A stretch of 64,000 nt of DNA from Schmidtea nova (GCA_044892505.1 CM097882.1:295244001-295308000); one strand, 5' to 3'; shown: positions 31,551 to 48,805, numbered from the stretch's first letter. Notes: generated by a model from the sequence alone, not told the origin. A program made the numbers and translations.

Positions 31551-31568
31551 TGGGGGCTCAGCCGGGAT
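31551..31568 (+). promoter_or_regulatory. Primer-binding site, tRNA-Pro type
   Basis: TGGGGGCTCAGCCGGGAT versus the canonical Pro PBS TGGGGGCTCGTCCGGGAT (16/18), 6 nt after the 5' LTR. Confidence 0.85.
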
Positions 31569-33080: not shown

Positions 33081-33120
33081 GGCCAATGAGCCTTATTGAA
33101 TGACCTAGCTAGGCGTTATG

Positions 33121-33438: not shown

Positions 33439-34051
33439 AGTGAATTATAGAGATATCCGGATAAATAGTAACAGGGGGAATATAGACCCATAGTATAATC
33501 GTCGACGAGATTTAGAGTAGTGCGCACCAGTAGTTAAGAGAATGCGAGTAAAGCTGATTATGCAACCTTAAGTAAAGCATGCAAGGAGAATAGTAAAAAT
33601 TTGGGCTGACCGGAGCAACCGGCAGAATGAGAAAAAACGATTGCTAGCAGGGAATAATGAGTAGAGATGATAAAATAATGATAAACGAGTCAGAAAGACT
33701 CAGGGAATTAGAGCGCTCGAGCGACCAATAAATTGGGAAACTGTGGGAAAAGTAACTGATTTGATAAAACATAGATAATTATTACGACGTAAATAGATAA
33801 TTGTGACCAGTCTATAGATAATTTAAATAGACTAAAAATAAAGGGGAATCTGGGAATTGGGAAATAATGAAAACCCAGTAATAAGTAATCCCGAAAGAAA
33901 GGGAATAAAAGCGCGACGATAACAATAATGTATCGTTGAGGACCTTTGTATTTTAGATATACAAATCAATCAAATCAATCAATCAAGCAAGAAGAATCAG
34001 AAAAACGATAAGAGATAGAACAGGAAAATTGAGTATACAAAAGTAATCCCC

Positions 34052-34867
34052 TTGAGAAAAGGAGCAAAGAGTGTCGTAGTAAAGCCAACGGAAAAGAAAG
34101 TCGGTAGCAACAGTAATAAAAAAGACAAAACTAGTACTACAACAAAATCAACAAAAAAGCAGAAAGCCGGCAAAGATAACCCACAAGGGAGTAAATCGAG
34201 GAAAATAATAAGAGATAAATCGATTACCGAAAACGATAAATTGTCAATAGTAAGCAACAGCTCAAGTAACAAAGAAAACCAAGCCGAACCCAAGGAGAAC
34301 CAACCAAGTGAAATAGAAAGCGACGAAACTAACAACTATAATATCGAAGAAATAGAACACGAGATAGAACAAGAAGGAGAAATCGACGAAACTAACAACG
34401 ACAATATTGAAGAAGTAGAAAACGAGGTAGAACAAGAGATAGAAATCAACGCGAGTGATAACGAAAGTATAATATCAGATAACGAAGGAATAAGAGAAAC
34501 AGAAAGCGATTCAAGCTCGAGTAAAACGGAAGACGAACATAACAACGAACTAGAAACAAGAGGAAACGAAAGTAAAATAACTCAAGACAGCGGAATTGAA
34601 ATGGGTGAACCAAGAGAAGAAATAAAGGATAAATTTTCAGGAGAACCGTTTAACGGAGATGCAAGTAAATTAGAAACCTTTTTAAAAGAATTTGGCATAT
34701 TCGTGGAAGTATGCAAATGGAAAGCTGAAACAACAGTAAGCAGAATTCAGTTATATTTGAAAGATAGTGCATTGGACCTATATTTGGAAGCGAAAAATGG
34801 TACCAATCCACCTACAAGCTGGACAGCGATAAAGGATTTTTTTCCAACAAACATTTGGAATAAATAA
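34052..34867 (+). CDS. gag: Gag N-terminal part (basic/acidic low-complexity region plus start of capsid), frameshifted into the next ORF
   Basis: EPFNGDASKLETFL..YLKDSALDLY..SWTAIKDFF. Removing one T from the T7 run at 34837-34843 gives DFFQQTFGINKVLSEAFIEFSMRKQ..NES...YA..L..LA, a continuous retrotransposon gag domain. First in-frame ATG is 34601. Confidence 0.85.
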   Translation: MRKGAKSVVVKPTEKKVGSNSNKKDKTSTTTKSTKKQKAGKDNPQGSKSRKIIRDKSITENDKLSIVSNSSSNKENQAEPKENQPSEIESDETNNYNIEEIEHEIEQEGEIDETNNDNIEEVENEVEQEIEINASDNESIISDNEGIRETESDSSSSKTEDEHNNELETRGNESKITQDSGIEMGEPREEIKDKFSGEPFNGDASKLETFLKEFGIFVEVCKWKAETTVSRIQLYLKDSALDLYLEAKNGTNPPTSWTAIKDFFPTNIWNK

Positions 34868-34868
34868 A

Positions 34869-37800
34869 GTGCTGAGCGAGGCATTCATAGAATTCTCAAT
34901 GAGGAAACAAAAGATGAATGAATCTAATGCGGTATACGCGAGCGAACTGAAAAAATTAGCAAAATCGGTATTCAAGGATGGAGGTCCAATAAACGAGGAG
35001 TTAATGGCAGCTATCTTCATAGGAGGATTAAGAAGACCCGACATAAGAGCACAAGTGGGATGTCAAGGATGCAAGACCATAGATCAAGCGTTAGAAACAG
35101 CTAACCGATTTGAATTACACATGATAGGAAGTGAGGGCAGAATTTATTTAGCCATGGACACAGCGCAAACCGAACCAGAGGTAAATCTCAACAATCACAT
35201 TCCAAATTCGCAACAATTAAACCGACCACCCCCTCAACGAAGGAATGAAGGAAATAAGGTGCAGAACTTTGAAAGCCAAAACAATTACAACCCTCAAAGA
35301 CAAACAAAACAATGTAAAACATGTGGAAAGTTAGGACACTGGCAGCAAGAATGCTATCAAAATTTGAATTGCGGAAAATGTGGAGTTAAAGGACACTCGG
35401 AAAGCAGATGTTCTACAATAATCTGTTTTAATTGCGGACGACCTGGTCACTATTCAAGAAATTGCGGACAAAAAAGTAATCAACGAGGAAACTGGCAGAG
35501 TAATGGGAACCGACCAAATTACGGAAATCAAGCAAATACTGTAAACCGACCAGATTATGGGAACCAACAAGTCAATAATAACAATAATCAGAACAAAACC
35601 ACCCCCAAAGAAATACATTTAATGCAAGAAGTCCAAAGATTGACGGAACTTATAAACAATACGACGAGAGGAAATCCGCAAACCAATCAACAGCAAATTA
35701 GCATGATGAGAAAAATAGAAAGCGAAAACGAACGATTGAATCGAGAAAGTCAAGCACGACACGCTCAGGAATGGGCAAGAATACAAAGAGAGGATGAACA
35801 AAAACAGCAAGAAAGAGAACGACAACCTCTAAGAATTAACATGCTAAGAGCAACAAACCAAACAGACACTCGCGAGAAAGAAACCACACTGGAAATGAAT
35901 TCGATAGACCCGAATCCAGCCGACAACGAAAGTCGAAAAGAAATAGTACAAAAAGATGAAGAAGTAGAAAAAGAAGCAGAAAAGGGAGAGGAAACCGAGA
36001 TAAACCAGGAAGAGAGAAGAAAAATTTGGAAAAAAGGAATGATGGTAATCATGCCCAACGACCATATGTTTCGATTCCAATATAACGCAAAAGAAAAGGT
36101 GGAAATACTGTTCAATAAAGTAAACCAGATGATTCCAGGAGTGACAAAACTGCCCAGAGAAGCGTTCTTACAAATAGGAGATGCACCATCAGTAAAATTA
36201 AAATTAACAGATACATGGGAAAACGTGGGAGTAACAGAGACAAAAAGAAATGTGATGAGAATTAAAGAAATAGAACCAGAAGAAATTCCACCACCAATAC
36301 GTCACGAAACCCGAATCCGGCGAATATTTGAAGGAAAAATGATAAGAAGACGTTTAAAAGAGATAGACGAGTTGGGAAAGAAAATGGGAAAAGTCGAAGT
36401 AATAGAGGACAAGAGTGAACCAACACCAGAAATTGACAAAAACGAACAAGAACCAACGGAGAATATACAAGGAGAAACGAACCAAACAGCACATATTAAT
36501 ATGTTAAGAAATACCACCAGAGAGTTTTCCGATGAAGAAGAAGATAGTGACATCAGTAGCCTAGCAGGAGACATATTAAATGAATCCGAAGACGAAAATA
36601 AAGAGAGAGAAGTAATAAAGACCTCAGAACCTACACAGATAAAAGTAGATGAAATCCAGAAATTACTAGATAACTCGCTAGAAGTAATATATAACGAAGA
36701 GTTCATGGACAAGAAACAATATCGGAAATTCATGAAAGCATTATTACAAATGAACTACAAAGAATGGTTACAAGACCGGGAAGTAGACATGTTGAATCGA
36801 TACGTAGGGAAATTAATAGAGGAACCACTCCTCAATTACACCATCTCAATAATAATAAATACGTCTACACCAAGAATCTGGATCAAAACTCCATTTACAG
36901 ATGATATCTACAGATGGGTAGAGGACAGACTAGGGAGCTCATATAAAAACAAATTCATCTATTCGCAGAATAGACTCGTAAAGAAAAAAACGCACTTAGT
37001 GGAAACAGGTATATGGCCAGGAGAAATAACTCTGTTATCAATATGTGATGAAAAAGAAGAAGAGAACCTACAAGAAGTTGCAAGGGAAGCAAACGCGTGC
37101 TTCGAACGGAGAATAAAACCACGGTTAGAATACGAGAAAGAACGAGTCTTACGAAAAAATCTAAATTCCCTGATAGAACAAATCATACCACAAGTCAAAA
37201 AACATAGAAAAGAGTTAATGAGAAGCGAATACGAGAAATTAAAACGATGTATTGAGTGCATACGTGACACAAGTCACACGAGATGGTCACAAATCTCACA
37301 CGATAAATTAATCGCAAAAATGGGAAAAACAATGTTCAGACAAGGGAAAATAACAGATCTAAAAATTTCGGTAGAATTACCTAATGAGGACACCAAAGAA
37401 ATTGAGGTGGTAGCGGATTGCACCATTAGGGAATTAATAAATGTCATCAACGAGACACTAGTGCAGAGAGAACCAGAAGACGAATGGGAAGACGACATAA
37501 TCATACAATACAACGAACATGTATTATGGGATCACGATGAGAGACGATTATATAAAATCGGTATATGGGATAATCACCAAACAATCCACGTTAGCAGAAT
37601 GGGCGATACACCAAGGGAAACTGCTAAAGATGAGAAAAGAGAACGGGAACGACGGAAAGAAGTTGTGCGTAAATTACAACAAATAGTAGAAATTTATCGA
37701 AATTGGCGAATTGGGCCAGAGTGGGAAAATGTACTAGAAGAACTCAATCTCAACAGACGAATACGAACACCCGTAGAAAAACAATGGAACGAGAAAGGAA

Positions 37801-40800
37801 AATGTTGGGAACCAAAAGAAGGGGAATATGAAGAAGAATATAAAAGAGGAATTGAAGATGACTGCGAACCAGAGATGGGAAGGGTTTGCATGGTGACAAG
37901 GAAAGCTACGCCAATAGACCTAGATGGACCAGAAACCGCGGCTATGTGGCTAGAAAGGGAAAAGCAAAAAACGGAAGAATTTGTCGAAATATTAAAAACT
38001 AATGCGCACGGTAAGAGAAAATTAATAAAGGGTCTCGCAGATTTTTTCGTGGTAAATGGGGAAGATATAACATGCTTGCGTAAAGTAGCAAAAGCAATCG
38101 CGGAATATAAAAGAGTTAACGAGTGGTGTCCGGAACAACTAGACCACGTAATTAGGAAATGGAGAAATCAAGAATTCTCGCAGGAAATTCCACAGAAAGT
38201 ACATTTAAGAATAATATACCCAAACAAGGATAAGGAAGAGTTGTGGGTAGGAATAGCAGAAAAAATTCGAGATATTAAAAAGAAATTGAGATACGAACCA
38301 CCATTCCATTTACAACACCAAGGACGATCATTAGATAACAGTTTGGAAATCGGAATAACACCAGCACAATTAGACCTCATGAATACCTTGACAGTAGAAG
38401 CAATAGCGGGTCAACCATTGAAACGTAAAGAAGAAAACCATAAACCACACGGAAGTATAAGTACGCCGAGCCCGATGAAATCAGCACTAACACCAGGGAC
38501 AAGTTCGAGACGATCTGAGACAACACCCAGAGGAAATAGAGAAAGGACTCCACCACAACCATATGACGTGGACGAAATATTTACAGACAGCGACGATATG
38601 ATAGAAGAATTAACCGAATTAACAAAGGAAAAAGACGACAATATTTTCGAAAGAATACAAGAATTACCTACGACAATACAAGTAACCAACACCGGAGAAA
38701 CAGAAGTCGAACAGGAAATAATAGTAGAAGAAGTCAACGATTTAACAGAAGATGAAACCAGAGGAGCGTATGCCGAAAATGTACAATTAACCCAGGAAAT
38801 GGAAAGATGGTTAGAAGAAAGAGCTAACGAACCAAGAGATGTCACGGAAGAAACAGGACGGGCAACAAGGTTTGTGGAAACAGGTACAGGAATGGATAAA
38901 CGACCTAGAGGTAGACCCAAGACAGACCCAGCAACAGTAGTTATCAGAAATAAGGATGAAAAGAGACAAGATCAATGGGAATTATGTTTAAAGAAATTAA
39001 ACAAAATCGCAGAGATGAAAGAAAAAGAGACAACACCAATATGTCAAGGGGAGGAATGGATATCGAAAACAATAATGGAACTATTGGCAATAATTGATCC
39101 GGAATTAAGAAAATACTGGCGTATAACGGAGATAAGCGAAAAGGCGAAGTCACTACACAACGCAATCGCACCCATCTTACCGGAATTCATAAAAGAGAAG
39201 ACGAAATCAAATCACTTAGACTGGCAAGGAACCACTATGTTAATAAAGAAACTGACAGAAGGAGCGGAAACAGATAACAAATACGTAATAGCTATTGCAT
39301 ACACGATCTACAATCTGTTGACACTGAGTAGAGGTCGACCAAAACCCACTGCATTAGAGAGACATATAAAAAATACCGCAAAAATTATAGCGAGAGAAAT
39401 AGAACCATACGTCATTAACAAAGGAGGATGGGAAACATTTATAAAAACTAACCAGAAGAAAACACAAGCCAAGAATATGAAAAAGAAATTCGAAAAAATA
39501 TTGGAAGAGTTAGGAAAAGAACAAGCAGGAACAGGAAACGCAAAGTCATCAATGAATCTGAGTGCTATAATAATGATGATGTTGATTTGGATGATTAGCA
39601 CCGATAGCGCAACAGCATTCGAAGTGTTTGATTGCGACCAAATGAAGTTAGGAGAAAAGTATTCATTGAGAGGTACGGAGCAATGCAAAGATGCGACTCC
39701 AGTAGAGTTGCAAAAGATTAAAAAGGAACAATGGTACCACGTGTATCAAGAAGCAGAACTCATAAAGACAATGGTGAATGAATGTAAAGTGCAGAAGACG
39801 AGATTCGCATTCTACTGCGGGAGAGGACATTATTCAGCAATTGTCATGCCAGGAACGGAAAGAGAACCAATCGTGTTACAAGGAGAAGACTGCGAAGCAC
39901 TGTTTAAACATGGAGAAGTAACAACAAGAGATAAAATCAAGATAAGAGGAAAGCCAGGAATGATGATGCAACAAACCTACTATGTAGCAGGACGGATTAC
40001 GGGAGGAGAAGGATATTGTCAAGGAGAAACCTACCCGATATTCGGAGTACCCGCAACCAACCTAGTAGTAATGGATACGTATATAGTCGAATTAAAAAGC
40101 TATGAAGCATTCTTCGAACCAACAACGGGAGAAATGAAAACGTTATCCATGTGTAAAATCGACAGGAGCATGTGTCAAACGGGAATGTCAACATTAGTAT
40201 ACAAACCAAAGGTGAATGAATGTCAACTACAACTGCTACAAGGAGCAAAGTTCGACGAAATTCAAGGAAAAACGTTTCAGGAAGAAGACGATGACGACAA
40301 AGCTAGAGCAAAGCATCTCAAGGAAGCTTTGGAGAATAAAAGACAATTGAAACCGGATCATAGAGAAAAACGGATAGAGATGAGAGCCACACCAACAGTA
40401 TTGATAACCACAAATCAGGATGTGGGAATGAGGTTCATAAAAGGAAAAGCAACCCTCAAGTGTAGTACAACGGTATACGAAACAAATTACCCAGGAATAT
40501 ATGTGTCAAAACAAGAAGTGCCAAACGCGAAACCCAAAATCGACACAATGGATATCAAACTACACCTATATGTGAATAATAAAATGGATTTCCTATTCCA
40601 TAGAGGACAAGCCTCATTACAAAAAGTGTATTACGATCTGATCAATAATGATTGTATACTAAATCGAGAAATACTGAAGACAAAATTGGCCGTAGCAATT
40701 ACGAATCCCGATAGCGCGATGCCATTATTACCACTGAGAGAAGGACATTTCGGAAGAGTGGTTGGAGAAGCAATGTATGTATACATCTGCGAAAAGACAC

Positions 40801-43800
40801 ACGCATCGCTAGCAGCAACAACACAGTTGAAACCTGGAACCTGTACAAATGAGTTAGAAATCGATTACAAAGGAAAAGTACGATACGTTCAACCAGTGAC
40901 GAGAATCATCAATCCACCAGGGTTTGAACCAAATCCATTCAACTGTAGTAATGCGTATGGACCGCTTTATCAGAAACCAGATGGTAAATGGGTTATGTTC
41001 CCAGGAAGATCCGAAGTGATAGCACCAAGAGAATTCGAGCTAATGCAGTTGTCAAAGGATAGGCAATTCAGCGACGTGGATGTCTCAAACAACGGAATAT
41101 ATAGTCCAAAGGATTTAGAAGCAGCAAGGCAGAATATATTATTTCCAGCGAGAAGAGAAGCATTACTGTCAAATATCGTAACGATAACGGGAGGAACGAA
41201 TTATCGAGAAGGACCGAATTATGAACTGTTGTTGTCACCAGCACATTTCAAGAAAGCCACAGAAAATATGATGAAAGCAATGTGGGGAAGATTTTTGATA
41301 TTCGGACAAATGATGGCTGGAATACTGGGGGTTATATTAATCATCCAAATCGTCAGAGTAATAATAACACAAATGTTAGCATGTTTTGACATCTACAAGA
41401 GAGAAAAGAAAGTGAATTGGAAAATGGTAGTAGGATTTTTACCATTCCTTGCGAAAACGATGGTGTTACACGGTCACTCAAAAGATATCCACCGAATAAA
41501 AAGACTCCTGAAGATATTAGCAAAAATGAAGGGAACAGATGAAGAAGTAGGACGCAAATTTAAAAAGATAATGAACGACGAACAAGCAAGACAACAGCTC
41601 AAGAGAGAAAGAAAAGGTTTATGGGAGAGGATGAAAGGATATAAAACCCAAAATGATTCGAGTGACGACGATGATGACGATGACGACTATAAGGGAGGAC
41701 AAGTGTATAAGAACCAAGCACCACAATACATCGAAAAGAATCCAGCCGACGCATGGAAATGTTACGCGCCTCCACCAACAATGTATCAAGAACCACTACA
41801 AGGAGGAAAAAATAGCACGATGCAAATGATGCCAATGACAAATGTATACCCCATGATACCAGAAGATTATAAAATGAGAAGATGTAGAAGCGTAGATCCA
41901 CAAGGAGATACACACACGATCGCAGTAATGTCATCAAACACAGGTTCAGTGTTAACCACGACAATAGAGATTAACGGAAGAGAAATCGAAGCAATGATCG
42001 ACACGGGAGCAAACATTTCCGCCATCGACATCAAATGGATACCACAAGAGCAAAGACGGGAAATAGAAAGGACAAACGTCCATGTAATTGCATGTAGCAA
42101 AGAAGTTGTAGAAGTAGCAGGAAGATGGTGGGTAAAAATACGCCACTTAAACACGGAAATCGATACATACGTAGCAGTTATACCAGCGTTAAGCGTACCT
42201 TGCATCATCGGAACAGATTTGATGCCAGCATTATTTAAAGAAATTGTAATCGATCTCGGAACAATGAGACTAAAAGATCGCACAGGACAAATATGCGCAA
42301 TAGAAGCTAAAGTGACAAGTTCAAAGCAAATGATAATACCCGCAAGAAAGGAGAAAATATGTTACGTAAAAATAGATCCGACAATCCAAGGGGATATGAT
42401 TTTCGAACCAAGTAAGAGATTCGAGAAAAGAAAAGCGTTGCCAATGGCAAGAGGACTAGTCAACATAAATGACGATGGAGAAATCCCAATAAACGTAGTA
42501 AACTTCGATGAAGAGGACAAAATAATATACGAAAACGAAAGATTAGGTAAATTAACCCCAATGATGGATATCGAACTGCCCATAGAAGGAGCAGAGAAAG
42601 ATAAAGAACCAACCTGGAATATAGATAGTGAATTATTAAATGAGGATCAAAGGAAGCAGTTAGAAAAACTCCTGATAGAGTATAAGGATATATTTGCAGC
42701 ATCCGATTTGGATCTAGGAACATGTGATGTCACACTACATACAATACCATTAACAGATGAAACACCAATTGCATTAAGGCCGTACAAATTAGCGGAAGCA
42801 CAGAAGGCAGTAGCAGAAGCAGAAGTGAAGAAAATGTTGGATGCAGAAGTAATCGAACCAAGTTGTTCACCCTGGCAATTTCCAGTGGTAATGGTGAAGA
42901 AGAAAGACGGAACACAGAGATTCTGTATAGATTACCGAAGATTGAATACAGTGACAAAACGAGATACTTACCCATTACCAGACATCAACGAGATGCTACT
43001 AACATTACAAGGAGCAGCATATTTTACGTCGTTAGATCTGAAAAGCGGATATTGGCAAATAAAAATGAAGGAAGAAGATAAAGAGAAAACTGCCTTTACC
43101 ATCGGTAGAGACCTATATCAATTTCGAAAGATGCCATTTGGATTAACGAACGCACCAGCATCATTTCAGAGATGCATGAATTTCGTCACCCATGGAATAA
43201 AGCAGTGCATGGTCTACATCGACGATTTATTAATTTATTCTAGTACATTCGAACAACACATACAAGACATTCGAGATGTATTCGTTAGACTTAGACAATG
43301 GAAGTTAAAACTCAAGCCATCCAAGTGTGACTGGGCAAAAGAAAAGGTTACATTTTTAGGACATATAGTGTCAGCAAAAGGAAAAGAACCGGATCCTAGA
43401 AACATCGACAAGGTAAAAGAATGTCCAGTACCAAAAACAATAACCCAAATACAAGAATTTCTCGGATTATGTGGATATTATAGGAAGTTTATAAAAGATT
43501 ACGCCGGAATCGCAAAGCCTATACAGGAACTGGTAAAGAAAGATGTATCATTCATATGGGGAGATGGACAACAAACAGCCTTTGAAACGTTGAGAGATAA
43601 ATTGATAACCGCACCCATATTGGTACACCCAGACTTTAAGAAGCCATTCCTACTTGCAACAGATGCAAGCGGATATGCAGCAGGAGCAGTATTAGGACAA
43701 TACGATGACGAAGGAAAAGAACGTGTAATCGGATATTATAGCCGGACATTCAAAAAGCATGAGAAAAATTATTCAGTGACAGAACGGGAAGCATTAGCGA

Positions 43801-44189
43801 TTATACTAGCAATAAAACATTTTAAATATTTATTATTGGGTCACATCATCTGCATAACAACAGATCACCAACCGCTTGTATGGTTAGGACAGCACAAGGA
43901 AACATCTAGTAGACTAATGCGATGGGCAATGCAGTTACAGGAGTACTCACCGGACATAAAATTTAAATCAGGACGAGCAAATGCGAATGCAGACTGTATG
44001 TCAAGACTGACATTTCCGGAATTAACCGATCCTGATGTACAACGAATTTGTGTATTAATAGCAGAAGATTTAGATTTTAGCGAGCTTAAGAAAGATCAAC
44101 AAGAAGACAAAGAATTAGGACAAATCATAGAGTTCCTAACATCTCGAAACATGGAGGTATTCAAAGAGAATAAGGAATTAAATAAATAA
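34869..44189 (+). CDS. Polyprotein: capsid C-half, 3 zinc knuckles, Ubl x4, Bcl-2-like, Env-like glycoprotein, protease, RT, RNase H
   Basis: 3,106-aa open frame; domain motifs are listed as separate features. Confidence 0.95.
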   Translation: MLSEAFIEFSMRKQKMNESNAVYASELKKLAKSVFKDGGPINEELMAAIFIGGLRRPDIRAQVGCQGCKTIDQALETANRFELHMIGSEGRIYLAMDTAQTEPEVNLNNHIPNSQQLNRPPPQRRNEGNKVQNFESQNNYNPQRQTKQCKTCGKLGHWQQECYQNLNCGKCGVKGHSESRCSTIICFNCGRPGHYSRNCGQKSNQRGNWQSNGNRPNYGNQANTVNRPDYGNQQVNNNNNQNKTTPKEIHLMQEVQRLTELINNTTRGNPQTNQQQISMMRKIESENERLNRESQARHAQEWARIQREDEQKQQERERQPLRINMLRATNQTDTREKETTLEMNSIDPNPADNESRKEIVQKDEEVEKEAEKGEETEINQEERRKIWKKGMMVIMPNDHMFRFQYNAKEKVEILFNKVNQMIPGVTKLPREAFLQIGDAPSVKLKLTDTWENVGVTETKRNVMRIKEIEPEEIPPPIRHETRIRRIFEGKMIRRRLKEIDELGKKMGKVEVIEDKSEPTPEIDKNEQEPTENIQGETNQTAHINMLRNTTREFSDEEEDSDISSLAGDILNESEDENKEREVIKTSEPTQIKVDEIQKLLDNSLEVIYNEEFMDKKQYRKFMKALLQMNYKEWLQDREVDMLNRYVGKLIEEPLLNYTISIIINTSTPRIWIKTPFTDDIYRWVEDRLGSSYKNKFIYSQNRLVKKKTHLVETGIWPGEITLLSICDEKEEENLQEVAREANACFERRIKPRLEYEKERVLRKNLNSLIEQIIPQVKKHRKELMRSEYEKLKRCIECIRDTSHTRWSQISHDKLIAKMGKTMFRQGKITDLKISVELPNEDTKEIEVVADCTIRELINVINETLVQREPEDEWEDDIIIQYNEHVLWDHDERRLYKIGIWDNHQTIHVSRMGDTPRETAKDEKRERERRKEVVRKLQQIVEIYRNWRIGPEWENVLEELNLNRRIRTPVEKQWNEKGKCWEPKEGEYEEEYKRGIEDDCEPEMGRVCMVTRKATPIDLDGPETAAMWLEREKQKTEEFVEILKTNAHGKRKLIKGLADFFVVNGEDITCLRKVAKAIAEYKRVNEWCPEQLDHVIRKWRNQEFSQEIPQKVHLRIIYPNKDKEELWVGIAEKIRDIKKKLRYEPPFHLQHQGRSLDNSLEIGITPAQLDLMNTLTVEAIAGQPLKRKEENHKPHGSISTPSPMKSALTPGTSSRRSETTPRGNRERTPPQPYDVDEIFTDSDDMIEELTELTKEKDDNIFERIQELPTTIQVTNTGETEVEQEIIVEEVNDLTEDETRGAYAENVQLTQEMERWLEERANEPRDVTEETGRATRFVETGTGMDKRPRGRPKTDPATVVIRNKDEKRQDQWELCLKKLNKIAEMKEKETTPICQGEEWISKTIMELLAIIDPELRKYWRITEISEKAKSLHNAIAPILPEFIKEKTKSNHLDWQGTTMLIKKLTEGAETDNKYVIAIAYTIYNLLTLSRGRPKPTALERHIKNTAKIIAREIEPYVINKGGWETFIKTNQKKTQAKNMKKKFEKILEELGKEQAGTGNAKSSMNLSAIIMMMLIWMISTDSATAFEVFDCDQMKLGEKYSLRGTEQCKDATPVELQKIKKEQWYHVYQEAELIKTMVNECKVQKTRFAFYCGRGHYSAIVMPGTEREPIVLQGEDCEALFKHGEVTTRDKIKIRGKPGMMMQQTYYVAGRITGGEGYCQGETYPIFGVPATNLVVMDTYIVELKSYEAFFEPTTGEMKTLSMCKIDRSMCQTGMSTLVYKPKVNECQLQLLQGAKFDEIQGKTFQEEDDDDKARAKHLKEALENKRQLKPDHREKRIEMRATPTVLITTNQDVGMRFIKGKATLKCSTTVYETNYPGIYVSKQEVPNAKPKIDTMDIKLHLYVNNKMDFLFHRGQASLQKVYYDLINNDCILNREILKTKLAVAITNPDSAMPLLPLREGHFGRVVGEAMYVYICEKTHASLAATTQLKPGTCTNELEIDYKGKVRYVQPVTRIINPPGFEPNPFNCSNAYGPLYQKPDGKWVMFPGRSEVIAPREFELMQLSKDRQFSDVDVSNNGIYSPKDLEAARQNILFPARREALLSNIVTITGGTNYREGPNYELLLSPAHFKKATENMMKAMWGRFLIFGQMMAGILGVILIIQIVRVIITQMLACFDIYKREKKVNWKMVVGFLPFLAKTMVLHGHSKDIHRIKRLLKILAKMKGTDEEVGRKFKKIMNDEQARQQLKRERKGLWERMKGYKTQNDSSDDDDDDDDYKGGQVYKNQAPQYIEKNPADAWKCYAPPPTMYQEPLQGGKNSTMQMMPMTNVYPMIPEDYKMRRCRSVDPQGDTHTIAVMSSNTGSVLTTTIEINGREIEAMIDTGANISAIDIKWIPQEQRREIERTNVHVIACSKEVVEVAGRWWVKIRHLNTEIDTYVAVIPALSVPCIIGTDLMPALFKEIVIDLGTMRLKDRTGQICAIEAKVTSSKQMIIPARKEKICYVKIDPTIQGDMIFEPSKRFEKRKALPMARGLVNINDDGEIPINVVNFDEEDKIIYENERLGKLTPMMDIELPIEGAEKDKEPTWNIDSELLNEDQRKQLEKLLIEYKDIFAASDLDLGTCDVTLHTIPLTDETPIALRPYKLAEAQKAVAEAEVKKMLDAEVIEPSCSPWQFPVVMVKKKDGTQRFCIDYRRLNTVTKRDTYPLPDINEMLLTLQGAAYFTSLDLKSGYWQIKMKEEDKEKTAFTIGRDLYQFRKMPFGLTNAPASFQRCMNFVTHGIKQCMVYIDDLLIYSSTFEQHIQDIRDVFVRLRQWKLKLKPSKCDWAKEKVTFLGHIVSAKGKEPDPRNIDKVKECPVPKTITQIQEFLGLCGYYRKFIKDYAGIAKPIQELVKKDVSFIWGDGQQTAFETLRDKLITAPILVHPDFKKPFLLATDASGYAAGAVLGQYDDEGKERVIGYYSRTFKKHEKNYSVTEREALAIILAIKHFKYLLLGHIICITTDHQPLVWLGQHKETSSRLMRWAMQLQEYSPDIKFKSGRANANADCMSRLTFPELTDPDVQRICVLIAEDLDFSELKKDQQEDKELGQIIEFLTSRNMEVFKENKELNK
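35313..35465 (+). other. Nucleocapsid: three CX2CX4HX4C zinc knuckles
   Basis: CKTCGKLGHWQQEC, CGKCGVKGHSESRC, CFNCGRPGHYSRNC. Confidence 0.97.
36036..38399 (+). other. Region with four divergent ubiquitin-like (beta-grasp) domains (~36036-36266, 36837-37046, 37359-37595, 38199-38399)
   Basis: By-eye alignment to ubiquitin, best for LKISVELPNEDTKEIEVVADCTIRELINVI..IIIQYNEHVLWD..RRLYKIGIWDNHQTIHV. Confidence 0.6.
39057..39446 (+). other. Bcl-2-like domain
   Basis: BH2-like EPYVINKGGWETF and BH1-like KLTEGAETDNKYVIAIAY in an all-helical ~130-aa segment. Confidence 0.75.
39552..41468 (+). other. Env-like glycoprotein: signal peptide, Cys-rich ectodomain and TM; chuvirus-G / gB-like class III fusogen type
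   Basis: MNLSAIIMMMLIWMISTDSATA|FEVFDC..YSL..EQC..VYQ..CKV..FYCG; YVNNKMDF..LQKVYYDL..DCIL.R..L...LA..NP..A..L..GHFGRVVGEAMYVYIC; CTNEL..Y.G..RYVQPVTRII..C; TM FLIFGQMMAGILGVILIIQIV (41292-41387). Confidence 0.85.
41964..42270 (+). other. Aspartic protease (retropepsin)
   Basis: IEINGREIEAMIDTGANISAI (DTG at 42000) and CIIGTDLM. Confidence 0.95.
42720..44010 (+). other. pol: Reverse transcriptase plus RNase H (Ty3/Gypsy type)
   Basis: SPWQFPVVMVKKKDGTQRFCIDYRRLN, LDLKSGYWQI, MPFGLTNAPASFQR, YIDD (43215); TDASGYAAGAVL, YSVTEREALA, TDHQPL, NANADCMSR. Confidence 0.98.
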
Positions 44190-44215
44190 TTAAATAAGGA
44201 ATAAATAAAGGATGG

Positions 44216-47200
44216 TTGTTAATACAAGACGGAGAAAAGAGATTGATGTGTTTACCGGAAAACAGAAGGAAAGAGATAATGATCCAGTACCATGATGGGA
44301 AATTAGGAGGCCATATGTCCGAGAAGAAGACAATAAATCGTATGAGACAAAAATATTATTGGCGAACAATGGAAGAAGATATAAAAGAATGGATTAAAAA
44401 TTGTCTAACTTGCGCAACCAGAAAGGATAGTGGGAAGAAATGGAAGAACCCGCTACAACCAATGCCGATACCAGCAGAACCAATGACAACTATAGCAATG
44501 GACGTAATAGGACCATTACCGGAAAGTCTAAACGGAAATATTTGTATATTAGTGATAACAGATTATCTGACAAAATTCCCGGAAGCATTTGCCATGCAAG
44601 ACCAAAAAGCAAAAACTGTAGCAAAAATTTTAGTGGAAGAAATATGTTGCAGATACGGAACCCCAAAACAAATACTCACAGACCAAGGAACTAATTTTAT
44701 GAGCGAGCTATTGAACGAGGTAACAAACTATTTCAGAATAGCAAAATTGAGAACTTCACCATATCACCCGCAAACGAATGGACAAACGGAGCGATTCAAT
44801 GGTACATTGATTAGAATGTTATCAAATTACGTCAGCAGACATCAAACTGATTGGGACGAATACATAAAATTATGTTTAATGGCATACCGAATGTCGATAC
44901 ATGCAGCAACAAAACTAAGCCCATTTCAACTTATGTATGGAAGAGAATGCAACATGCCCATAGATTTAGAGTATCAGCCACCATTATCGCAATATATGGA
45001 AGACGACGACTACATAACCAAATTCAAAGAAAGAATGCAGGAAATATGGAAAACGGCAGAACTCAACATTAAATTTTATCAGGAAAGTTATAAGGACTTA
45101 CACGATCAGAAGAAAAATGTTAAAGCGAACGATCTAAAACCAGGAGATTGGGTGATAATAGAAACTCCCGAAATAATACCAGGAACAGTTAAGAAACTCC
45201 AAAGACCTGGAAGAGGACCTTATGAAATTATATACAAAAAGGACAATAATGTCAAAGTTAAGCTAATAAATCGACCCTTAATACGACCCATATATGTAAA
45301 CACCTGCAGATGTAAAAAGGTGCCTAAAACGATAACTACAACACCAGAAAATCGAATAATAACTAGATCACAAACAGCCAGGATAAATATGCTCAGAGCT
45401 AATGTAACTGAAGACGACAAAGCAGAAATAAGGCAAAAAGAAATCAGAAACAAAGAGATCATATTGAAGGCGAGAGAAATAATGGGAAGATGGCATGTTA
45501 GAGACGAAGCAGGCATATCAAGGGATATTAGACATATGATTAGCCGTTACGCACAAGGATTACCAACCGAACCAATTATTTCTGAATTATTGGAAAAAAT
45601 CCCTGAAATACTCTTATTGAAAGATGTAGGAGGACAACCAGCCTTACATAATGCGATAGAGTGTAAAAACATTGAAAGAGCAAAAGAATTCCTAAAAATC
45701 GCAAAAGAAACAAACCAAAACTTGGACGTAGGGAATCGGGAACAAGAAACTCCATTAATGACAGCCGCAATCCACCAAGCAGATAAAGAAATGATAGACC
45801 TATTGATAAAAGCCCATTTCAGTTGGACAGAACGAGATAGAGAGGACAAAACAGTGCTAAATCACGTAATATGGAGTTCTCACCAACCAATGCTGAAATA
45901 CATAATAGCTAACTCCACTTGGGAGATAGACGAACTAGTTAAAGGAGACATTATCAAAGAGGCAATCAAAATTGGTAAATGCAACACGATCCGTAAGTTA
46001 GTCAAATGGAAACGACCAGAAGATGATACATGGGTCTTAGACATAAACGAAGTATACAGCGAAGGACAAAACGCGTTGTTAAGATATCTTCTGAAATTTA
46101 CTTGTGATCAGAAGACATTACTAACCTTATTAGACAGAGGAAACATAAACATCACAAAGAATGAAGAAGAATACAAATTCGATAAAGAGAAGGAAGCCTT
46201 ATTCAACAAGATTAGGAAATGGTGTGCGAAACCACTTGACAAACTAATAACATACAAAGACATAAACAATTTTAACGAGAAATACCAGACAATAGTAAGT
46301 GAGTACGAGGAATTAGTAAAAATCTTAAACCATCCCGAAAAATGCAAACAGGTTTTGGAGAAAAAAGAAAGAGAAAGTAACAAGAAACTCACACCACTCT
46401 TTAAAGCAGAAGCACCATACCAAGCTAGACTAGATGCGATACAAGAAAAAGCAAAAGAATTGTTACCAGAATTCGAGAATAGTAAACATGCACTGGAAAT
46501 ACTCGGTGCATTAGTTGAAAAAGTACACGCATACGCAAAAGGAACTTACAACGGAAACGACATAGTAATAATAAAAAAGGAGATGCCAGTAACATTTTTA
46601 CTACCAAAGGACGGAATAATGCCCATACATAGAGCTCTACGAAATGGCAAAGATAGAAAAGTAATGGAAATTGCAAGAGTAATGCAAAATTGCGGAAGCA
46701 ATATGAATATGATAGACGAGAAAGGAGATACACTTATGGTATTTGCAGCAAGGGCCAAAACGAAAACAAAGGTATTAGAGGAACTATACAAAGCAGGTGC
46801 AGGACTTACAGGAAAGACAGATAAAGATAATTCGATATTGGATGTAGCATTATTAACACACAATTGGGAAATGGTCAATTTCATTAAAACCGTCCCAAAT
46901 CAGGAAGAAATAGATCACCTAACTGATACGGTCAAGAAACCCAGTGTACTAGCAATGATGAACAACGTCGAACTAACAGAATCAATACTTACGTGGATAA
47001 ATCCTAATACTAACGAACCAGCATTCAGGATTAATAAATTTACAGAACATAACCAAAACTGGTGTATAAGAAGTGCCTTAATAACGTATAAATGGCCAGA
47101 GATATTGAAGATGTTTATGGAAAGAAAGGATCTAAGAATCACAAACAGCCCGAAAGAAGAAAAATACACAGGCAAATGGAAAGAATTGATGAAGACATAC

Positions 47201-48805
47201 GTCAACAATTGGATCAAGGCCAAAAAGGAAATCTTAGAATATAAATCCGCTAACAAAGCAATACCGGAGCAAGTAGAAACACAAGAATTTGAGGCAAGTA
47301 ATCTAACGACATTGGCATATGCAAAATTGATAGAAGAAATCAATGTCGAGGACGACATTTTCGACGAGCCAGGGGGAGATGACAATACAGATAGTGACGA
47401 CGGTAACAACTCAGAAAATCCAAGCGATCACGAACCACCCGATAAAGAGGAAAACGAGAGAAAAGACAAGAAACGAGACAAGGAAGGAAAGAAAGGTGAA
47501 GACGAAAAACAAAGAGATGAAGAGAGAGAACAAGGAACAAACGACCAAGGAGATAAAAATGACACCCAAAGAACAGGTTATAAATCAACCATAAAACCAT
47601 TCTTCAAACCAGAATTACTATTACTAACAATGATTATAACGTTAATTAATCCAAGTCAGGGAATGACATGTGAAGAAAGGGCAATAATACAAATAAAAAA
47701 CGCAAAAGGAATCGAACGAGTATGTTGGTCGAAAAAGGACAAAATCACGGAACAAAATAGCCCGATGGATTGCAGAATCTCAAAACACGAGCAAGAGATC
47801 ATAGAGATCAATGACTTAGATCTAGATACCTGGTACAAAATATGCACCGTTAGAAAACAAAAACATCCAAGATCACACAACACAATCGCATGTGCAAAAT
47901 ACCAAACACCTAAAGCAGCCATGACAATACAACAGTCACCCAAAGGAGATTACATCATCGGAAAATGTGGAAGAACAGAGACACAGAGAACAGAAAATAA
48001 AAAACCCCAGGCAATAGATAAGCAAACAACACCAACCCTACGAATTACAATAGAAAGGCCCGAAACAAGAATTGCCACAAACGAAACCGAAAGAGTGTCT
48101 TACCAAATGGAAGTATTATGCTTAGCACTCATACTAATAATAATAAAACGATTAGAGGAAGGAATAGAAATTGAAACTATGACAATAACAGAAGTGGAAG
48201 ATACACAGAACACTAACATAAAATGTTGGGCGAGGAATAACGAGGAAATCGGCGTAAATGAAATAAGGAAAAGTCGAAAACCCACAACAAACAAAGTAAT
48301 TAAAGTATCCGAAGTAAGAGCAGACAAGACGTACAAACTATGCCTATTAGAAAAAGAGACAAACAAGAAAGGTACCACAAAATGTAAAACATTCCAACCT
48401 GGAGAAGTAATAAAGTTCAGAAGGAGAACGAGGAAGAGAAATAAACAAATCAAACAGAAAATAAACATAACATTAGAAATAAAAGAGATAGAACCAAATG
48501 TGAAAGGAGTATGCTGGAGGAAGTACGAAAAAGAAACAAATGAAAGAAAGACACCACAATGTCGAACAAGCACAGGAGCAACGACGATACAAATAAAAGG
48601 TTTAGAAAGTAAACAAACTTATGAAATATGTCTCGTAAAGAAAAATGATCAGATAACGATAAACGACCTAGAATGCGGAATATACACCACTTCATCCGGA
48701 ACAAGAACTAAAACGATAACACGAAAAAATAAAAGAAGACAACGAAACAAAGGGAAACCGAAGTACACCACTACCTTTAAAAAAAAAACAATAAACAACC
48801 GATAA
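44216..48805 (+). CDS. Polyprotein continuation: integrase, ankyrin repeats, acidic linker, internal signal, FN3-like repeats
   Basis: HDGKLGGH..CLTC zinc-binding domain; MDVIGP, TDQGTNF, NGQTERFN (DDE); GPY; ankyrin clusters 45629-45910 and 46610-46891; signal-like LLLLTMIITLINPSQG (47615-47662). Confidence 0.93.
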   Translation: MLIQDGEKRLMCLPENRRKEIMIQYHDGKLGGHMSEKKTINRMRQKYYWRTMEEDIKEWIKNCLTCATRKDSGKKWKNPLQPMPIPAEPMTTIAMDVIGPLPESLNGNICILVITDYLTKFPEAFAMQDQKAKTVAKILVEEICCRYGTPKQILTDQGTNFMSELLNEVTNYFRIAKLRTSPYHPQTNGQTERFNGTLIRMLSNYVSRHQTDWDEYIKLCLMAYRMSIHAATKLSPFQLMYGRECNMPIDLEYQPPLSQYMEDDDYITKFKERMQEIWKTAELNIKFYQESYKDLHDQKKNVKANDLKPGDWVIIETPEIIPGTVKKLQRPGRGPYEIIYKKDNNVKVKLINRPLIRPIYVNTCRCKKVPKTITTTPENRIITRSQTARINMLRANVTEDDKAEIRQKEIRNKEIILKAREIMGRWHVRDEAGISRDIRHMISRYAQGLPTEPIISELLEKIPEILLLKDVGGQPALHNAIECKNIERAKEFLKIAKETNQNLDVGNREQETPLMTAAIHQADKEMIDLLIKAHFSWTERDREDKTVLNHVIWSSHQPMLKYIIANSTWEIDELVKGDIIKEAIKIGKCNTIRKLVKWKRPEDDTWVLDINEVYSEGQNALLRYLLKFTCDQKTLLTLLDRGNINITKNEEEYKFDKEKEALFNKIRKWCAKPLDKLITYKDINNFNEKYQTIVSEYEELVKILNHPEKCKQVLEKKERESNKKLTPLFKAEAPYQARLDAIQEKAKELLPEFENSKHALEILGALVEKVHAYAKGTYNGNDIVIIKKEMPVTFLLPKDGIMPIHRALRNGKDRKVMEIARVMQNCGSNMNMIDEKGDTLMVFAARAKTKTKVLEELYKAGAGLTGKTDKDNSILDVALLTHNWEMVNFIKTVPNQEEIDHLTDTVKKPSVLAMMNNVELTESILTWINPNTNEPAFRINKFTEHNQNWCIRSALITYKWPEILKMFMERKDLRITNSPKEEKYTGKWKELMKTYVNNWIKAKKEILEYKSANKAIPEQVETQEFEASNLTTLAYAKLIEEINVEDDIFDEPGGDDNTDSDDGNNSENPSDHEPPDKEENERKDKKRDKEGKKGEDEKQRDEEREQGTNDQGDKNDTQRTGYKSTIKPFFKPELLLLTMIITLINPSQGMTCEERAIIQIKNAKGIERVCWSKKDKITEQNSPMDCRISKHEQEIIEINDLDLDTWYKICTVRKQKHPRSHNTIACAKYQTPKAAMTIQQSPKGDYIIGKCGRTETQRTENKKPQAIDKQTTPTLRITIERPETRIATNETERVSYQMEVLCLALILIIIKRLEEGIEIETMTITEVEDTQNTNIKCWARNNEEIGVNEIRKSRKPTTNKVIKVSEVRADKTYKLCLLEKETNKKGTTKCKTFQPGEVIKFRRRTRKRNKQIKQKINITLEIKEIEPNVKGVCWRKYEKETNERKTPQCRTSTGATTIQIKGLESKQTYEICLVKKNDQITINDLECGIYTTSSGTRTKTITRKNKRRQRNKGKPKYTTTFKKKTINNR

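What the first reader, a model, noticed from the sequence alone, without database searches (positions are those of the whole stretch)
39552..41468. Class III (chuvirus-G / gB-like) envelope gene embedded in frame between Gag and protease
Seen: one uninterrupted frame runs from the zinc knuckles through a signal peptide, a ~560-aa Cys-rich ectodomain and a TM segment into the DTG protease, RT and RNase H. Established: env genes of retroviruses and errantiviruses lie downstream of pol as separate ORFs, and chuvirus-like glycoproteins have been captured by some LTR elements. Inference: a Gag-Env-Pro-Pol order forces co-translational membrane threading as in flavivirus polyproteins, gives equimolar Gag:Env:Pol, and tethers Pol to the Env cytoplasmic tail until cleavage. 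I know of no described retroelement with this order.
Basis: partly seen in the sequence, partly recalled or inferred. Interest (0 to 1): 0.95.

Follow-up and report, generated by a model that had tools for sequence, protein, structure and literature searches.

The report
Envelope gene inside giant retroelement polyprotein
A herpes-gB/chuvirus-type membrane-fusion (envelope) protein really is encoded in frame between Gag and the protease of a very young 29.7-kb LTR retroelement, but this layout has already been described for the giant 'Burro' retroelements of planarians and for other invertebrate endogenous retroviruses, so it is a good specimen of a known curiosity rather than a discovery.

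Summary
A 3,106-codon open frame runs from three CCHC zinc knuckles through about 1,360 residues with no significant family match. It then passes through a signal-peptide-like segment (39552-39617), a 556-residue ectodomain with 14 cysteines and one membrane anchor, and ends in DTG protease, RT and RNase H.

The ectodomain is a class III fusogen:
- Pfam PF24664, E = 2.8e-71.
- AlphaFold2 model, pLDDT 86.
- Foldseek: the 50 PDB matches listed are all herpesvirus gB (E about 1e-14); the best viral-library matches are chu-like glycoproteins (E = 1e-38 to 1e-30).

It is not a copy-specific insertion. Ten long polyproteins from metagenomes, 35-39% identical in Env, all have the order Env-PR-RT-RH-IN in one ORF. 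All 22 relatives examined keep the internal signal peptide, and they share no conserved Met there.

The novelty claim fails. The host element is 29,716 bp with identical 3,108-bp LTRs, RING and TRAF/MATH ORFs, ankyrin repeats and AT-rich flanks. This matches the planarian 'Burro' giant gypsy-like elements, for which in-frame env between gag and pol was reported in 2019 (PMC6431247). The GAG-ENV-POL order is also published for Nematoda, Bryozoa and Platyhelminthes (PMC13524379).

Translation as a polyprotein with signal-peptidase release is plausible but untested.

The parts
28437..58152 (+). Whole LTR retroelement, 29,716 bp with a 23,500-bp internal region. It is flanked by a 4-bp target-site duplication, CATA, at 28433-28436 and 58153-58156.
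28437..31544 (+). 5' LTR, 3,108 bp, with TG...CA ends. It contains ORFs of 159 and 198 aa.
   Evidence: identical to the 3' LTR over its full length; the ORFs.
55045..58152 (+). 3' LTR, 3,108 bp, 100% identical to the 5' LTR.
31551..31568 (+). Primer-binding-site-like 18-mer beginning with TGG, 6 nt downstream of the 5' LTR.
   Evidence: read directly from the sequence. The tRNA was not identified; there is no tRNA gene in the window.
31877..32338 (+). Accessory ORF of 153 aa with a C-terminal RING finger (zf-C3HC4_3), in the leader upstream of gag.
   Evidence: PF13920, E = 3.5e-11.
32814..33438 (.). Two tandem-repeat arrays in the leader: 29 bp x 9.1 copies and 32 bp x 9.9 copies.
34052..48805 (+). 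The gag-X-env-pro-pol coding region, about 4,900 codons in all. It is given as one part because it is interrupted: one frame change in gag and one in pol, with no stop inside a recognised domain.
35313..35465 (+). Three CCHC zinc knuckles (Gag nucleocapsid).
   Evidence: PF00098.
35466..39551 (+). Region 'X': about 1,360 highly charged residues between the knuckles and Env, with no significant family match. Its last ~180 residues give only sub-significant Bcl-xL matches.
   Evidence: no Pfam hit. AF2 single-sequence pLDDT 42, all-helical C-terminal part; 8 of 10 hits are Bcl-xL, E about 1.3.
39552..39617 (+). Internal signal-peptide-like segment of 22 aa: basic n-region, hydrophobic core, and A-x-A before the predicted cleavage point.
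   Evidence: the same architecture in all 22 relatives.
39618..41285 (+). Env ectodomain, 556 aa with 14 Cys: a class III fusion glycoprotein of the gB/chuvirus-G type.
   Evidence: PF24664, E = 2.8e-71; all 13 near-invariant Cys retained; pLDDT 86.4. Foldseek; profile search against PDB sequences.
41286..41396 (+). Membrane anchor, modelled as a single long hydrophobic helix, with a K/R-rich stretch on its C-terminal side.
41397..41960 (+). Env cytoplasmic tail and linker to the protease, including an acidic run.
   Evidence: no family match.
41961..42230 (+). Retropepsin (DTG protease).
   Evidence: PF00077, E = 2.5e-7.
42894..43370 (+). Reverse transcriptase (YIDD).
   Evidence: PF00078, E = 2.2e-37.
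43557..43946 (+). RNase H of the Ty3/gypsy type.
   Evidence: PF17917 and PF17919.
44255..44824 (+). Integrase (H2C2 zinc-binding domain plus DDE core).
   Evidence: PF17921, E = 1.7e-20; PF00665, E = 3.9e-10.
45644..45913 (+). Ankyrin repeats in the long extension downstream of the integrase.
   Evidence: PF12796, E about 1e-13.
49132..51069 (+). Accessory ORF of 645 aa. Two hydrophobic segments flank 475 aa that carry 12 patterned Cys and 7 N-glycosylation sequons. This looks like a second membrane glycoprotein, at the canonical env position.
   Evidence: no Pfam hit..
51646..53022 (+). Accessory ORF of 458 aa, TRAF-like (TRAF zinc finger plus MATH domain).
   Evidence: PF22486, E = 2.9e-20; PF02176, E = 2.3e-7.
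53135..54841 (+). Two further accessory ORFs. One of 353 aa gave a single weak Filament hit; I read it as coiled-coil-like. One of 200 aa has a strong hydrophobic segment.

Best explanation
Window 39552-41468 encodes a class III viral fusion glycoprotein of the herpesvirus-gB / chuvirus-G type. It is a fixed, in-frame module of the gag-pro-pol polyprotein of a giant Ty3/gypsy-type endogenous retrovirus.

The element spans 28437-58152 and is 29.7 kb long, with identical 3.1-kb LTRs. It matches the published description of the 'Burro' elements of dugesiid planarians.

Shown here:
- the glycoprotein's family and fold;
- its position and reading frame;
- conservation of that position in divergent relatives;
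- the anatomy of the element.

Inferred mechanism:
- The polyprotein is translated as one chain.
- Gag and region X stay in the cytosol.
- The internal signal peptide targets the ribosome to the ER, and signal peptidase cuts before the mature N-terminus.
- The ectodomain folds and forms disulfides in the lumen.
- The single anchor leaves the tail, protease, RT and RNase H (and, in intact relatives, integrase) on the cytosolic face, tethered until the retropepsin releases them.
- This would make Env and Pol in a 1:1 ratio and would place Pol at the membrane.

In this copy gag and pol each carry one frame change. These could be true mutations or assembly indels.
For: Sequence and frame.

Family and fold:
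- Pfam PF24664, 240.8 bits against a cutoff of 27.
- All 13 cysteines that are at least 90% conserved across the 70 aligned sequences (the window's Env plus 69 homologues) are present.
- AF2 model pLDDT 86.4, with a 48-residue central helix.
- The 50 PDB Foldseek matches listed (the best of 113 with E <= 0.001) are all herpesvirus gB, E = 3.5e-14 to 1.5e-11, aligned over about 640 columns.
- The best BFVD matches are chu-like, Tacheng tick virus 4, qin- and xinmo-like glycoproteins, E = 5e-38 to 1e-29, TM-score up to 0.60.
- In the profile search of PDB sequences, 38 of 39 hits are gB and fall on its central-helix region.

Family trait:
- Ten polyproteins of 2,099-4,057 aa all carry PF24664 together with a retropepsin domain, and nine of them also RT, RNase H and integrase; the shortest ends after the protease.
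- The order is always Env, then PR, RT, RH and IN, in one ORF.
- Further embedded relatives appear in the representative search.

Topology:
- A signal-like segment lies before Env and an anchor after it in most relatives.
- The n-h-c architecture is present in all 22 relatives, a small residue sits at -1 in 22 of the 23 sequences (relatives plus the window's copy), and there is no conserved Met.

Element anatomy: LTRs, target-site duplication, PBS-like site; RING ORF, TRAF/MATH ORF, ankyrin repeats, tandem repeats.

Published match:
- PMC6431247 describes Burro as over 30 kb, with three CCHC knuckles, RING, MATH_TRAF, ankyrin, BCL2-like and dUTPase-like motifs, tandem repeats, and env in frame between gag and pol.
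- The host genome is more than 70% A/T (PMC11410931). The window's flanks are 73-75% A/T.
Against: - Nothing here shows how the protein is expressed or processed. There are no RNA or protein data.
- The window's copy, unlike most relatives, has a Met at the start of the signal peptide, so separate initiation in this lineage is not excluded.
- No sequence comparison with GYPSM1 or Burro-1 to -4 was possible; membership rests on anatomy and on the literature.
- BIR and Smc motifs reported for Burro were not found.
- The BCL2-like, SUMO-like and dUTPase-like matches are sub-significant.
- TRAF/MATH lies in a separate ORF downstream of pol, whereas in Burro1 it is inside ORF1.
- The host species was not identified.
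- The two frame changes mean this copy, as assembled, would not make the full polyprotein.
Confidence: 0.75

Rival explanations
1. Env is expressed on its own from a spliced, trans-spliced or internally initiated subgenomic mRNA. Flatworms use spliced-leader trans-splicing. On this reading the in-frame continuity serves Pol expression or is tolerated, and Env is not released from a Gag-Env-Pol chain.
For: - The window's Env signal peptide begins with a Met.
- Canonical retroviruses and errantiviruses make Env from a subgenomic mRNA (established knowledge).
- In two relatives Gag is a separate ORF, so expression of the family's proteins is not strictly one chain.
Against: - No Met opens the signal peptide in most of the 22 relatives; a Met is seen at its start only in the window's copy and P0012.
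- The frame is open across both Env junctions in all ten long relatives despite only 35-39% identity. This would not be maintained if Env were an independent cistron.
Confidence: 0.2
2. The env module is an inactive relic or has been put to another use, for example as a membrane tether for Pol. The element would then spread only as an intracellular retrotransposon.
For: - The LTRs are identical, and the family is reported in thousands of copies (PMC6431247). This is compatible with purely intragenomic amplification.
- There is only one N-glycosylation sequon in the ectodomain.
- Fusion loops were not examined.
Against: - The ectodomain is fully open.
- It keeps all 13 near-invariant cysteines and other conserved residues.
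- It folds with high confidence into the complete gB-like architecture.
- The module is retained across relatives that are only 35-39% identical.
Confidence: 0.1
3. The segment is a copy-specific nested insertion of a viral glycoprotein gene, or an assembly chimera.
For: None found. This was the refutation named in the finding.
Against: - The position, order and frame are the same in ten or more divergent relatives from independent assemblies.
- GC content is uniform at 0.37-0.40 across 34-46 kb.
- No repeats or target-site duplications flank the segment.
Confidence: 0.01

Closest known systems
Burro / GYPSM1 giant gypsy-like LTR retroelements of planarians (Jurka 2007; Grohme et al. 2018; Arkhipova and Yushenova 2019, PMC6431247)
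   Same: - Size of about 30 kb, with a ~25-kb internal region.
- Gag with three CCHC knuckles.
- Env in frame between gag and PR, with hits to mononegavirus-type glycoproteins.
- PR-RT-RH-IN order.
- RING, MATH_TRAF and ankyrin motifs; tandem repeats.
- Polyprotein of about 4,900 codons in total (published ORF1: 4,873 aa).
- AT-rich host genome.
   Different: - TRAF/MATH is a separate ORF downstream of pol. In Burro1 it is inside ORF1; in Dugesia tigrina it is in an upstream ORF.
- BIR and Smc were not found.
- BCL2-like, SUMO-like and dUTPase-like matches are only sub-significant here.
- This copy has two frame changes.
- No direct sequence comparison was possible.
GAG-ENV-POL 'ancient errantiviruses' with HSV/gB-type ENV in Nematoda, Bryozoa and Platyhelminthes (Chary and Hayashi, PMC13524379), and the nematode ERVs of Sacco et al. 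2022 (J Gen Virol 103:001739)
   Same: - Ty3/gypsy pol.
- gB-type class III Env placed upstream of pol.
- Ectodomain flanked by a signal peptide and a transmembrane segment.
- Lineage-conserved cysteines.
   Different: - Those elements are of ordinary size and lack the accessory gene set.
- PMC13524379 treats gag, env and pol as ORFs and does not discuss a fused polyprotein.
- That the nematode elements have one continuous gag-env-pro-pol ORF is my recollection of Sacco et al., which I could not read.
Glycoproteins of Jingchuvirales and other Monjiviricetes (Pfam PF24664), and herpesvirus gB
   Same: - Same family by profile.
- Same fold by Foldseek.
- Type I topology and a central long helix.
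   Different: - Only 23-27% identity to standalone proteins of about 650 aa, and 9-13% to gB.
- Here the protein has no start or stop codon of its own.
Anakin and other BEL/Pao and gypsy elements of arthropods carrying a chuvirus-like glycoprotein (Dezordi et al. 2020, PMC7642597)
   Same: An LTR retroelement that captured a chuvirus-type class III glycoprotein.
   Different: - In those elements env is described as next to or downstream of pol. That it is a separate gene there is my inference; I did not read PMC7642597.
- Different retroelement family and host phylum.
Flavivirus and pestivirus polyprotein processing (a resemblance in how it works, not membership)
   Same: - A cytosolic capsid part is followed by an internal signal sequence.
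- A luminal glycoprotein is released by signal peptidase.
- Downstream enzymes lie on the cytosolic side and are cut by the virus's own protease.
   Different: - Unrelated proteins and replication strategy.
- Nothing here has been shown experimentally.

Membership tests
Class III viral fusion glycoproteins (gB / Monjiviricetes G; Pfam PF24664) | Significant match to the family profile | tested here: met
   PF24664, E = 2.8e-71, 240.8 bits against a cutoff of 27; 944 homologues at E <= 1e-3.
Class III viral fusion glycoproteins (gB / Monjiviricetes G; Pfam PF24664) | Elongated multi-domain beta-rich fold with a long central helix, matching solved class III structures | tested here: met
   pLDDT 86.4, helix at residues 337-384; the 50 PDB matches listed are all gB, E about 1e-14 to 1e-11; chu-like G, E down to 5e-38, TM-score up to 0.60.
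Class III viral fusion glycoproteins (gB / Monjiviricetes G; Pfam PF24664) | Type I topology: N-terminal signal sequence and a single C-terminal membrane anchor | tested here: met
   (hydropathy and cleavage-site pattern). No dedicated predictor was available.
Class III viral fusion glycoproteins (gB / Monjiviricetes G; Pfam PF24664) | Conserved disulfide-forming cysteines | tested here: met
   13 Cys columns conserved at 90% or more, all present in the window's protein.
Class III viral fusion glycoproteins (gB / Monjiviricetes G; Pfam PF24664) | Bipartite internal fusion loops at the tip of domain I; trimer formation; fusion activity | not tested
Activity cannot be assessed from sequence.
Ty3/gypsy (Metaviridae) LTR retroelements | PR-RT-RH-IN order, gypsy-type RNase H and H2C2 integrase | tested here: met
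   generic gypsy polyproteins are about 44% identical in RT-RH.
Ty3/gypsy (Metaviridae) LTR retroelements | LTRs with TG...CA ends, 4-6 bp target-site duplication, PBS next to the 5' LTR | tested here: met
   The polypurine tract is not obvious, and the primer tRNA was not identified.
Burro giant retroelements of planarians | Total length of about 30 kb, with an internal region up to 25 kb | tested here: met
   29,716 bp total, 23,500 bp internal. Criterion from PMC6431247.
Burro giant retroelements of planarians | Gag with three CCHC knuckles, and env in frame between gag and PR | tested here: met
   The Retrotrans_gag profile itself was not matched in this copy. Homology to relatives' gag was seen.
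Burro giant retroelements of planarians | Accessory motifs: RING, MATH_TRAF, ankyrin | tested here: met
Burro giant retroelements of planarians | Accessory motifs: BCL2-like upstream of env, SUMO-like, dUTPase-like between PR and RT | tested here: inconclusive
   Bcl-xL, E about 1.3. Ubiquitin_4 and SAP18, E = 0.05-0.13; dUTPase, E about 1.3. All lie at the reported positions, but none is significant.
Burro giant retroelements of planarians | Accessory motifs: BIR and Smc | tested here: not met
   No Pfam match at E <= 0.01-1 in any ORF scanned. These motifs vary between described Burro families.
Burro giant retroelements of planarians | Nucleotide or protein similarity to GYPSM1 / Burro-1 to -4; host in Dugesiidae | not testable with these tools
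   Repbase and planarian genomes are not among the collections. Flanks are 73-75% A/T, against more than 70% reported for S. mediterranea.
Nematode ERVs of Sacco et al. 2022 | Nematode host; monophyletic pol clade | not tested
   The paper is not held and no sequences were available.

The most novel reading that the evidence does not exclude
In this whole family, Env is never a gene of its own. This covers the planarian giant element and the 15-kb-class relatives seen only in metagenomes.

Env would be made only by signal-peptidase cleavage out of the Pol polyprotein, through a conserved internal signal peptide that has no start codon. Env and Pol would then be produced 1:1, and Pol would be delivered to the budding membrane as the cytoplasmic tail of Env.

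In the giant element the same hydrophobic segment might also serve as the tail anchor of a Bcl-2-like module that ends just before it. A second, unrelated membrane glycoprotein at the canonical env position (49132-51069) could supply receptor binding.

The papers I read do not discuss this processing scheme.
Probability: 0.35. Interest if true: 0.55.

Novelty: already known. Interest (0 to 1): 0.27.

Why it matters
The finding's central point is a class III envelope gene translated in frame between gag and pro-pol. This has been in the literature since 2019 for planarian Burro elements, and since 2022-2026 for nematodes, bryozoans and flatworms. Its value here is as a clean, very young specimen, not as a discovery.

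What remains open and worthwhile is the mechanism. No one has shown how a retroelement expresses a luminal glycoprotein from the middle of a cytosolic polyprotein.

- The internal signal peptide without a start codon is conserved in 22 divergent relatives.
- An uncharacterised family of such elements exists in metagenomes.

The accessory genes may also bear on how such elements deal with host apoptosis and innate signalling. These are the RING and TRAF-like ORFs, the ankyrin repeats, a possible Bcl-2-like module and a second glycoprotein-like ORF.

Tried and rejected
1. A single-sequence search of Env against PDB sequences gave only chance hits to PEX1. The profile built from 70 sequences was needed to reach gB.
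2. The word-based homologue search with the Env piece alone found only 2 proteins.
3. The third homologue search, with the RT-RH region, returned only generic, multi-copy gypsy gene models (Cordylochernes, plants). It said nothing about the host.
4. Cluster look-up of 10 relatives gave no organism names.
5. Exact look-ups of three window ORFs found nothing on record.
6. Rfam and tRNA scans of the window were empty, so there were no host markers and no primer tRNA.
7. The AF2 single-sequence model of the 361 residues upstream of Env was unusable (pLDDT 41.7). I ran no further search on it.
8. Pfam scans of region X, the PR-RT linker and my three by-eye ubiquitin-like candidates gave nothing significant.
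9. A furin-like REKR site in a low-confidence Env loop is absent from all 22 relatives, so I rejected it as a family feature.
10. A locus search with alignment A1 failed because it had no conserved stretch. A scan of metagenome contigs with Env found no relative.
11. An HMM built from the relatives' post-integrase membrane modules did not match any accessory ORF of the window.
12. One literature search was wasted on a term that also matches 'nerve'. Sacco et al. 2022 and Grohme et al. 2018 are not held.
13. I considered a copy-specific insertion and an assembly chimera and rejected both.

Full report
**1. The observation**

A 3,106-codon open frame contains the finding's interval. Reading along it:
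- three CX2CX4HX4C zinc knuckles at 35313-35465;
- about 1,360 residues of very charged sequence;
- a Met-led hydrophobic segment at 39552-39617;
- a 556-residue stretch with 14 cysteines, starting at 39618;
- one strong hydrophobic anchor at 41286-41396;
- a 188-residue tail;
- DTG protease, YIDD reverse transcriptase and RNase H.

Three things need adding:
- The knuckles and the signal peptide are far apart, separated by a region with no significant family match.
- The capsid-like N-terminal part of gag lies in a different frame.
- The integrase also lies in a different frame.

Single-ORF relatives match both gag pieces collinearly, and all ten long relatives have RNase H and integrase in one ORF. 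I therefore count one frame change in gag and one in pol, with no stop codon inside any recognised domain. I cannot tell whether these are mutations or assembly indels.

**2. What the segment is**

- Pfam assigns it to PF24664, Monjiviricetes_fusion (E = 2.8e-71, 240.8 bits against a cutoff of 27).
- An exhaustive HMMER search found 944 homologues. The closest, at 29-47% identity, are embedded in proteins of 1,300-3,243 aa. Then comes a large tier of standalone proteins of about 650 aa at 23-27% identity.
- I aligned 70 sequences: the window's Env plus 69 of these homologues. All 13 cysteine columns conserved at 90% or more are present in the window's protein.
- The AlphaFold2 model built on that alignment has mean pLDDT 86.4 and a 48-residue central helix.
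- Foldseek against the PDB returned 113 matches with E <= 0.001. The 50 listed are all herpesvirus gB (E = 3.5e-14 to 1.5e-11, about 640 aligned columns).
- Against predicted viral structures, the best matches are glycoproteins of chu-like viruses, Tacheng tick virus 4, and qin- and xinmo-related viruses (E = 5e-38 to 1e-29, TM-score up to 0.60). Nyavirus, rhabdo-like viruses and herpes gB follow.
- A profile search of PDB sequences gave 38 gB chains among 39 hits, all on the central-helix region, at a weak E of about 0.003.

The label 'chuvirus-G / gB-like class III' therefore holds.

**3. Is it a copy-specific insertion?**

No.
- I searched with the Env region while keeping the length window of the whole polyprotein. 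This returned ten proteins of 2,099-4,057 aa from ENA and JGI metagenome assemblies. One of them is deposited under a Flavobacteriaceae MAG. They are 35-39% identical in Env, and all carry PF24664 with a retropepsin domain. Nine also carry RT, RNase H and integrase; the shortest ends after the protease.
- BLAST with the window's domains places them in the same order in every one: (knuckles) - variable region - Env - one or two protease-like segments - RT - RNase H - integrase, all in one ORF. RT identity is 56-62%.
- Two of these were fetched with their contigs. In one, a 718-aa upstream ORF overlaps the polyprotein in another frame. In the other, a 680-aa Gag (Retrotrans_gag plus zinc knuckles) is separated from the polyprotein by a stop.
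- The invariant is therefore Env fused to Pro-Pol.

**4. The junctions**

- In all 22 relatives examined, the conserved mature N-terminus is preceded by a basic stretch, a hydrophobic core of 12-14 residues and a short polar stretch.
- The residue at -1 is small in 22 of the 23 sequences (the 22 relatives plus the window's copy).
- A Met opens this segment only in the window's copy and one relative.
- Hydropathy shows one anchor after the ectodomain in most relatives.
- In the window, K/R-rich sequence follows the anchor on its C-terminal side.
- By the -3/-1 rule and the positive-inside rule (established knowledge), Gag and X are cytosolic, the ectodomain is luminal, and the tail, PR and Pol are cytosolic.
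- An open frame across both junctions is kept at 35-39% identity without a conserved start codon. This argues that the chain is really translated through.
- This is inference from sequence. No expression data were available.

**5. The surrounding element**

- Two 3,108-bp LTRs are identical (28437-31544 and 55045-58152). They have TG...CA ends and a CATA target-site duplication. A TGG-initiated PBS-like 18-mer lies 6 nt after the 5' LTR.
- The element is 29,716 bp long.
- Besides gag-X-env-pro-pol it carries:
  - a RING-finger ORF in the leader;
  - two tandem-repeat arrays;
  - ankyrin repeats in a ~1,300-residue extension after the integrase;
  - a 645-aa ORF with the layout of a membrane glycoprotein;
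  - a TRAF-like ORF with a TRAF zinc finger and a MATH domain;
  - two more ORFs.
- The flanks are 25-27% GC and contain remnants that I read, from the translation alone, as hAT-like and mariner-like.

**6. Comparison with what is known**

- Arkhipova and Yushenova 2019 (PMC6431247) describe the Burro/GYPSM1 elements of Schmidtea mediterranea:
  - total length over 30 kb, with an internal region up to 25 kb;
  - a 4,873-aa ORF1 starting with Gag and three CCHC knuckles;
  - RING, MATH_TRAF_C, BIR, ankyrin, BCL2-like, SUMO-like and dUTPase-like motifs, plus tandem repeats;
  - in Dugesia tigrina, MATH_TRAF sits in an accessory ORF.
- The S. mediterranea genome is more than 70% A/T and rich in Burro elements of over 30 kb (PMC11410931).
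- The window's element matches this description in:
  - size;
  - number of knuckles;
  - total coding length (about 4,900 codons);
  - position of env;
  - RING, TRAF and ankyrin content;
  - tandem repeats;
  - host base composition.
- Sub-significant hits fall exactly where BCL2-like and dUTPase-like motifs are reported. For the 182 residues before the signal peptide, 8 of 10 hits are Bcl-xL, at E of about 1.3. For the PR-RT linker, the hits are dUTPase and dCTP deaminase, at E of about 1.3.
- BIR and Smc were not found.
- I could not compare sequences with Repbase, so the exact family and host species remain unconfirmed.
- Independently, Chary and Hayashi (PMC13524379) report the GAG-ENV-POL order with HSV/gB-type ENV in Nematoda, Bryozoa and Platyhelminthes. 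They cite Sacco et al. 2022 for nematode ERVs with 'flipped' env and pol.
- My recollection is that Sacco et al. describe a continuous gag-env-pro-pol ORF. I could not read that paper.

**7. Verdict**

The observation and the structural assignment are right. The mechanistic inference is reasonable and gains some support from the conserved internal signal peptide. The claim of novelty is wrong.

I rate the finding as already known. This copy may belong to a Burro subfamily whose arrangement of accessory genes differs from the two described examples.

Interest is low to moderate. The unexplored parts are the processing mechanism, the metagenomic relatives and the second glycoprotein-like ORF.

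- My first notebook entry copied ORF bounds as the ORF lister printed them, before I recognised that they bracket the two frame changes.

Noticed in passing
window 49132-51069 (+): This 645-aa ORF has no family match. Two hydrophobic segments (aa 59-84 and 559-584) flank 475 residues that carry 12 cysteines in a repeated pattern and 7 N-glycosylation sequons, followed by a basic tail. It looks like a second membrane glycoprotein, sitting where a canonical env would be.
   Followed up: partly
window 31877-32338 (+) and 51646-53022 (+): The element carries a RING-finger ORF upstream of gag and a TRAF-like ORF (TRAF zinc finger plus MATH) downstream of pol. Both are host-type signalling or ubiquitination modules.
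   Followed up: partly
window 39006-39551 (+) and 42231-42818 (+): The 182 residues just before the Env signal peptide gave sub-significant hits, 8 of 10 to Bcl-xL. The PR-RT linker gave sub-significant hits to dUTPase and dCTP deaminase. If the Bcl-2-like reading is right, the Env signal peptide would double as that module's tail anchor after cleavage.
   Followed up: partly
window 29816-30295 and 30480-31076 (+), repeated in the 3' LTR: The 3.1-kb LTRs contain ORFs of 159 and 198 aa. The 198-aa ORF has a run of basic residues near its C-terminus. Neither has a family match.
   Followed up: no
window 40359-40370 (+): An R-E-K-R furin-type motif lies in a low-confidence acidic/basic loop of Env. 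It is absent from all 22 relatives.
   Followed up: yes
proteins P0001-P0010 (metagenomic relatives): Most relatives have two or three retropepsin-like segments. Four of the ten have one after the integrase, and most have two strong hydrophobic segments after it. The window's element has only one recognised protease.
   Followed up: partly
L001 1-6000; L002 17000-24900: The metagenome contigs place bacterial-type genes next to the retroelement relatives: MacB/ABC transporter and TetR in L001; luciferase-like and Mnh genes in L002. L001 1-2000 is 66% GC. One relative is deposited as a Flavobacteriaceae MAG protein. The likely causes are chimeric assembly and mis-binning.
   Followed up: no
L001 7198-7320 and 22462-22584: An LTR-like direct repeat (89% identical over 123 nt), 15.3 kb apart, brackets the relative's genes. 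The metagenomic relatives are therefore about half the size of the window's element.
   Followed up: no
window 9696-9974 (-) and 22689-23039 (+): By eye, from the translation alone, these ORF remnants in the AT-rich flank look hAT-like and mariner-like. The surroundings appear rich in transposon remnants.
   Followed up: no
window 6282-7076, 7297-7471, 16433-16760, 18246-19009, 19509-19649: Runs of N, all outside the element. They were left as they are.
   Followed up: no
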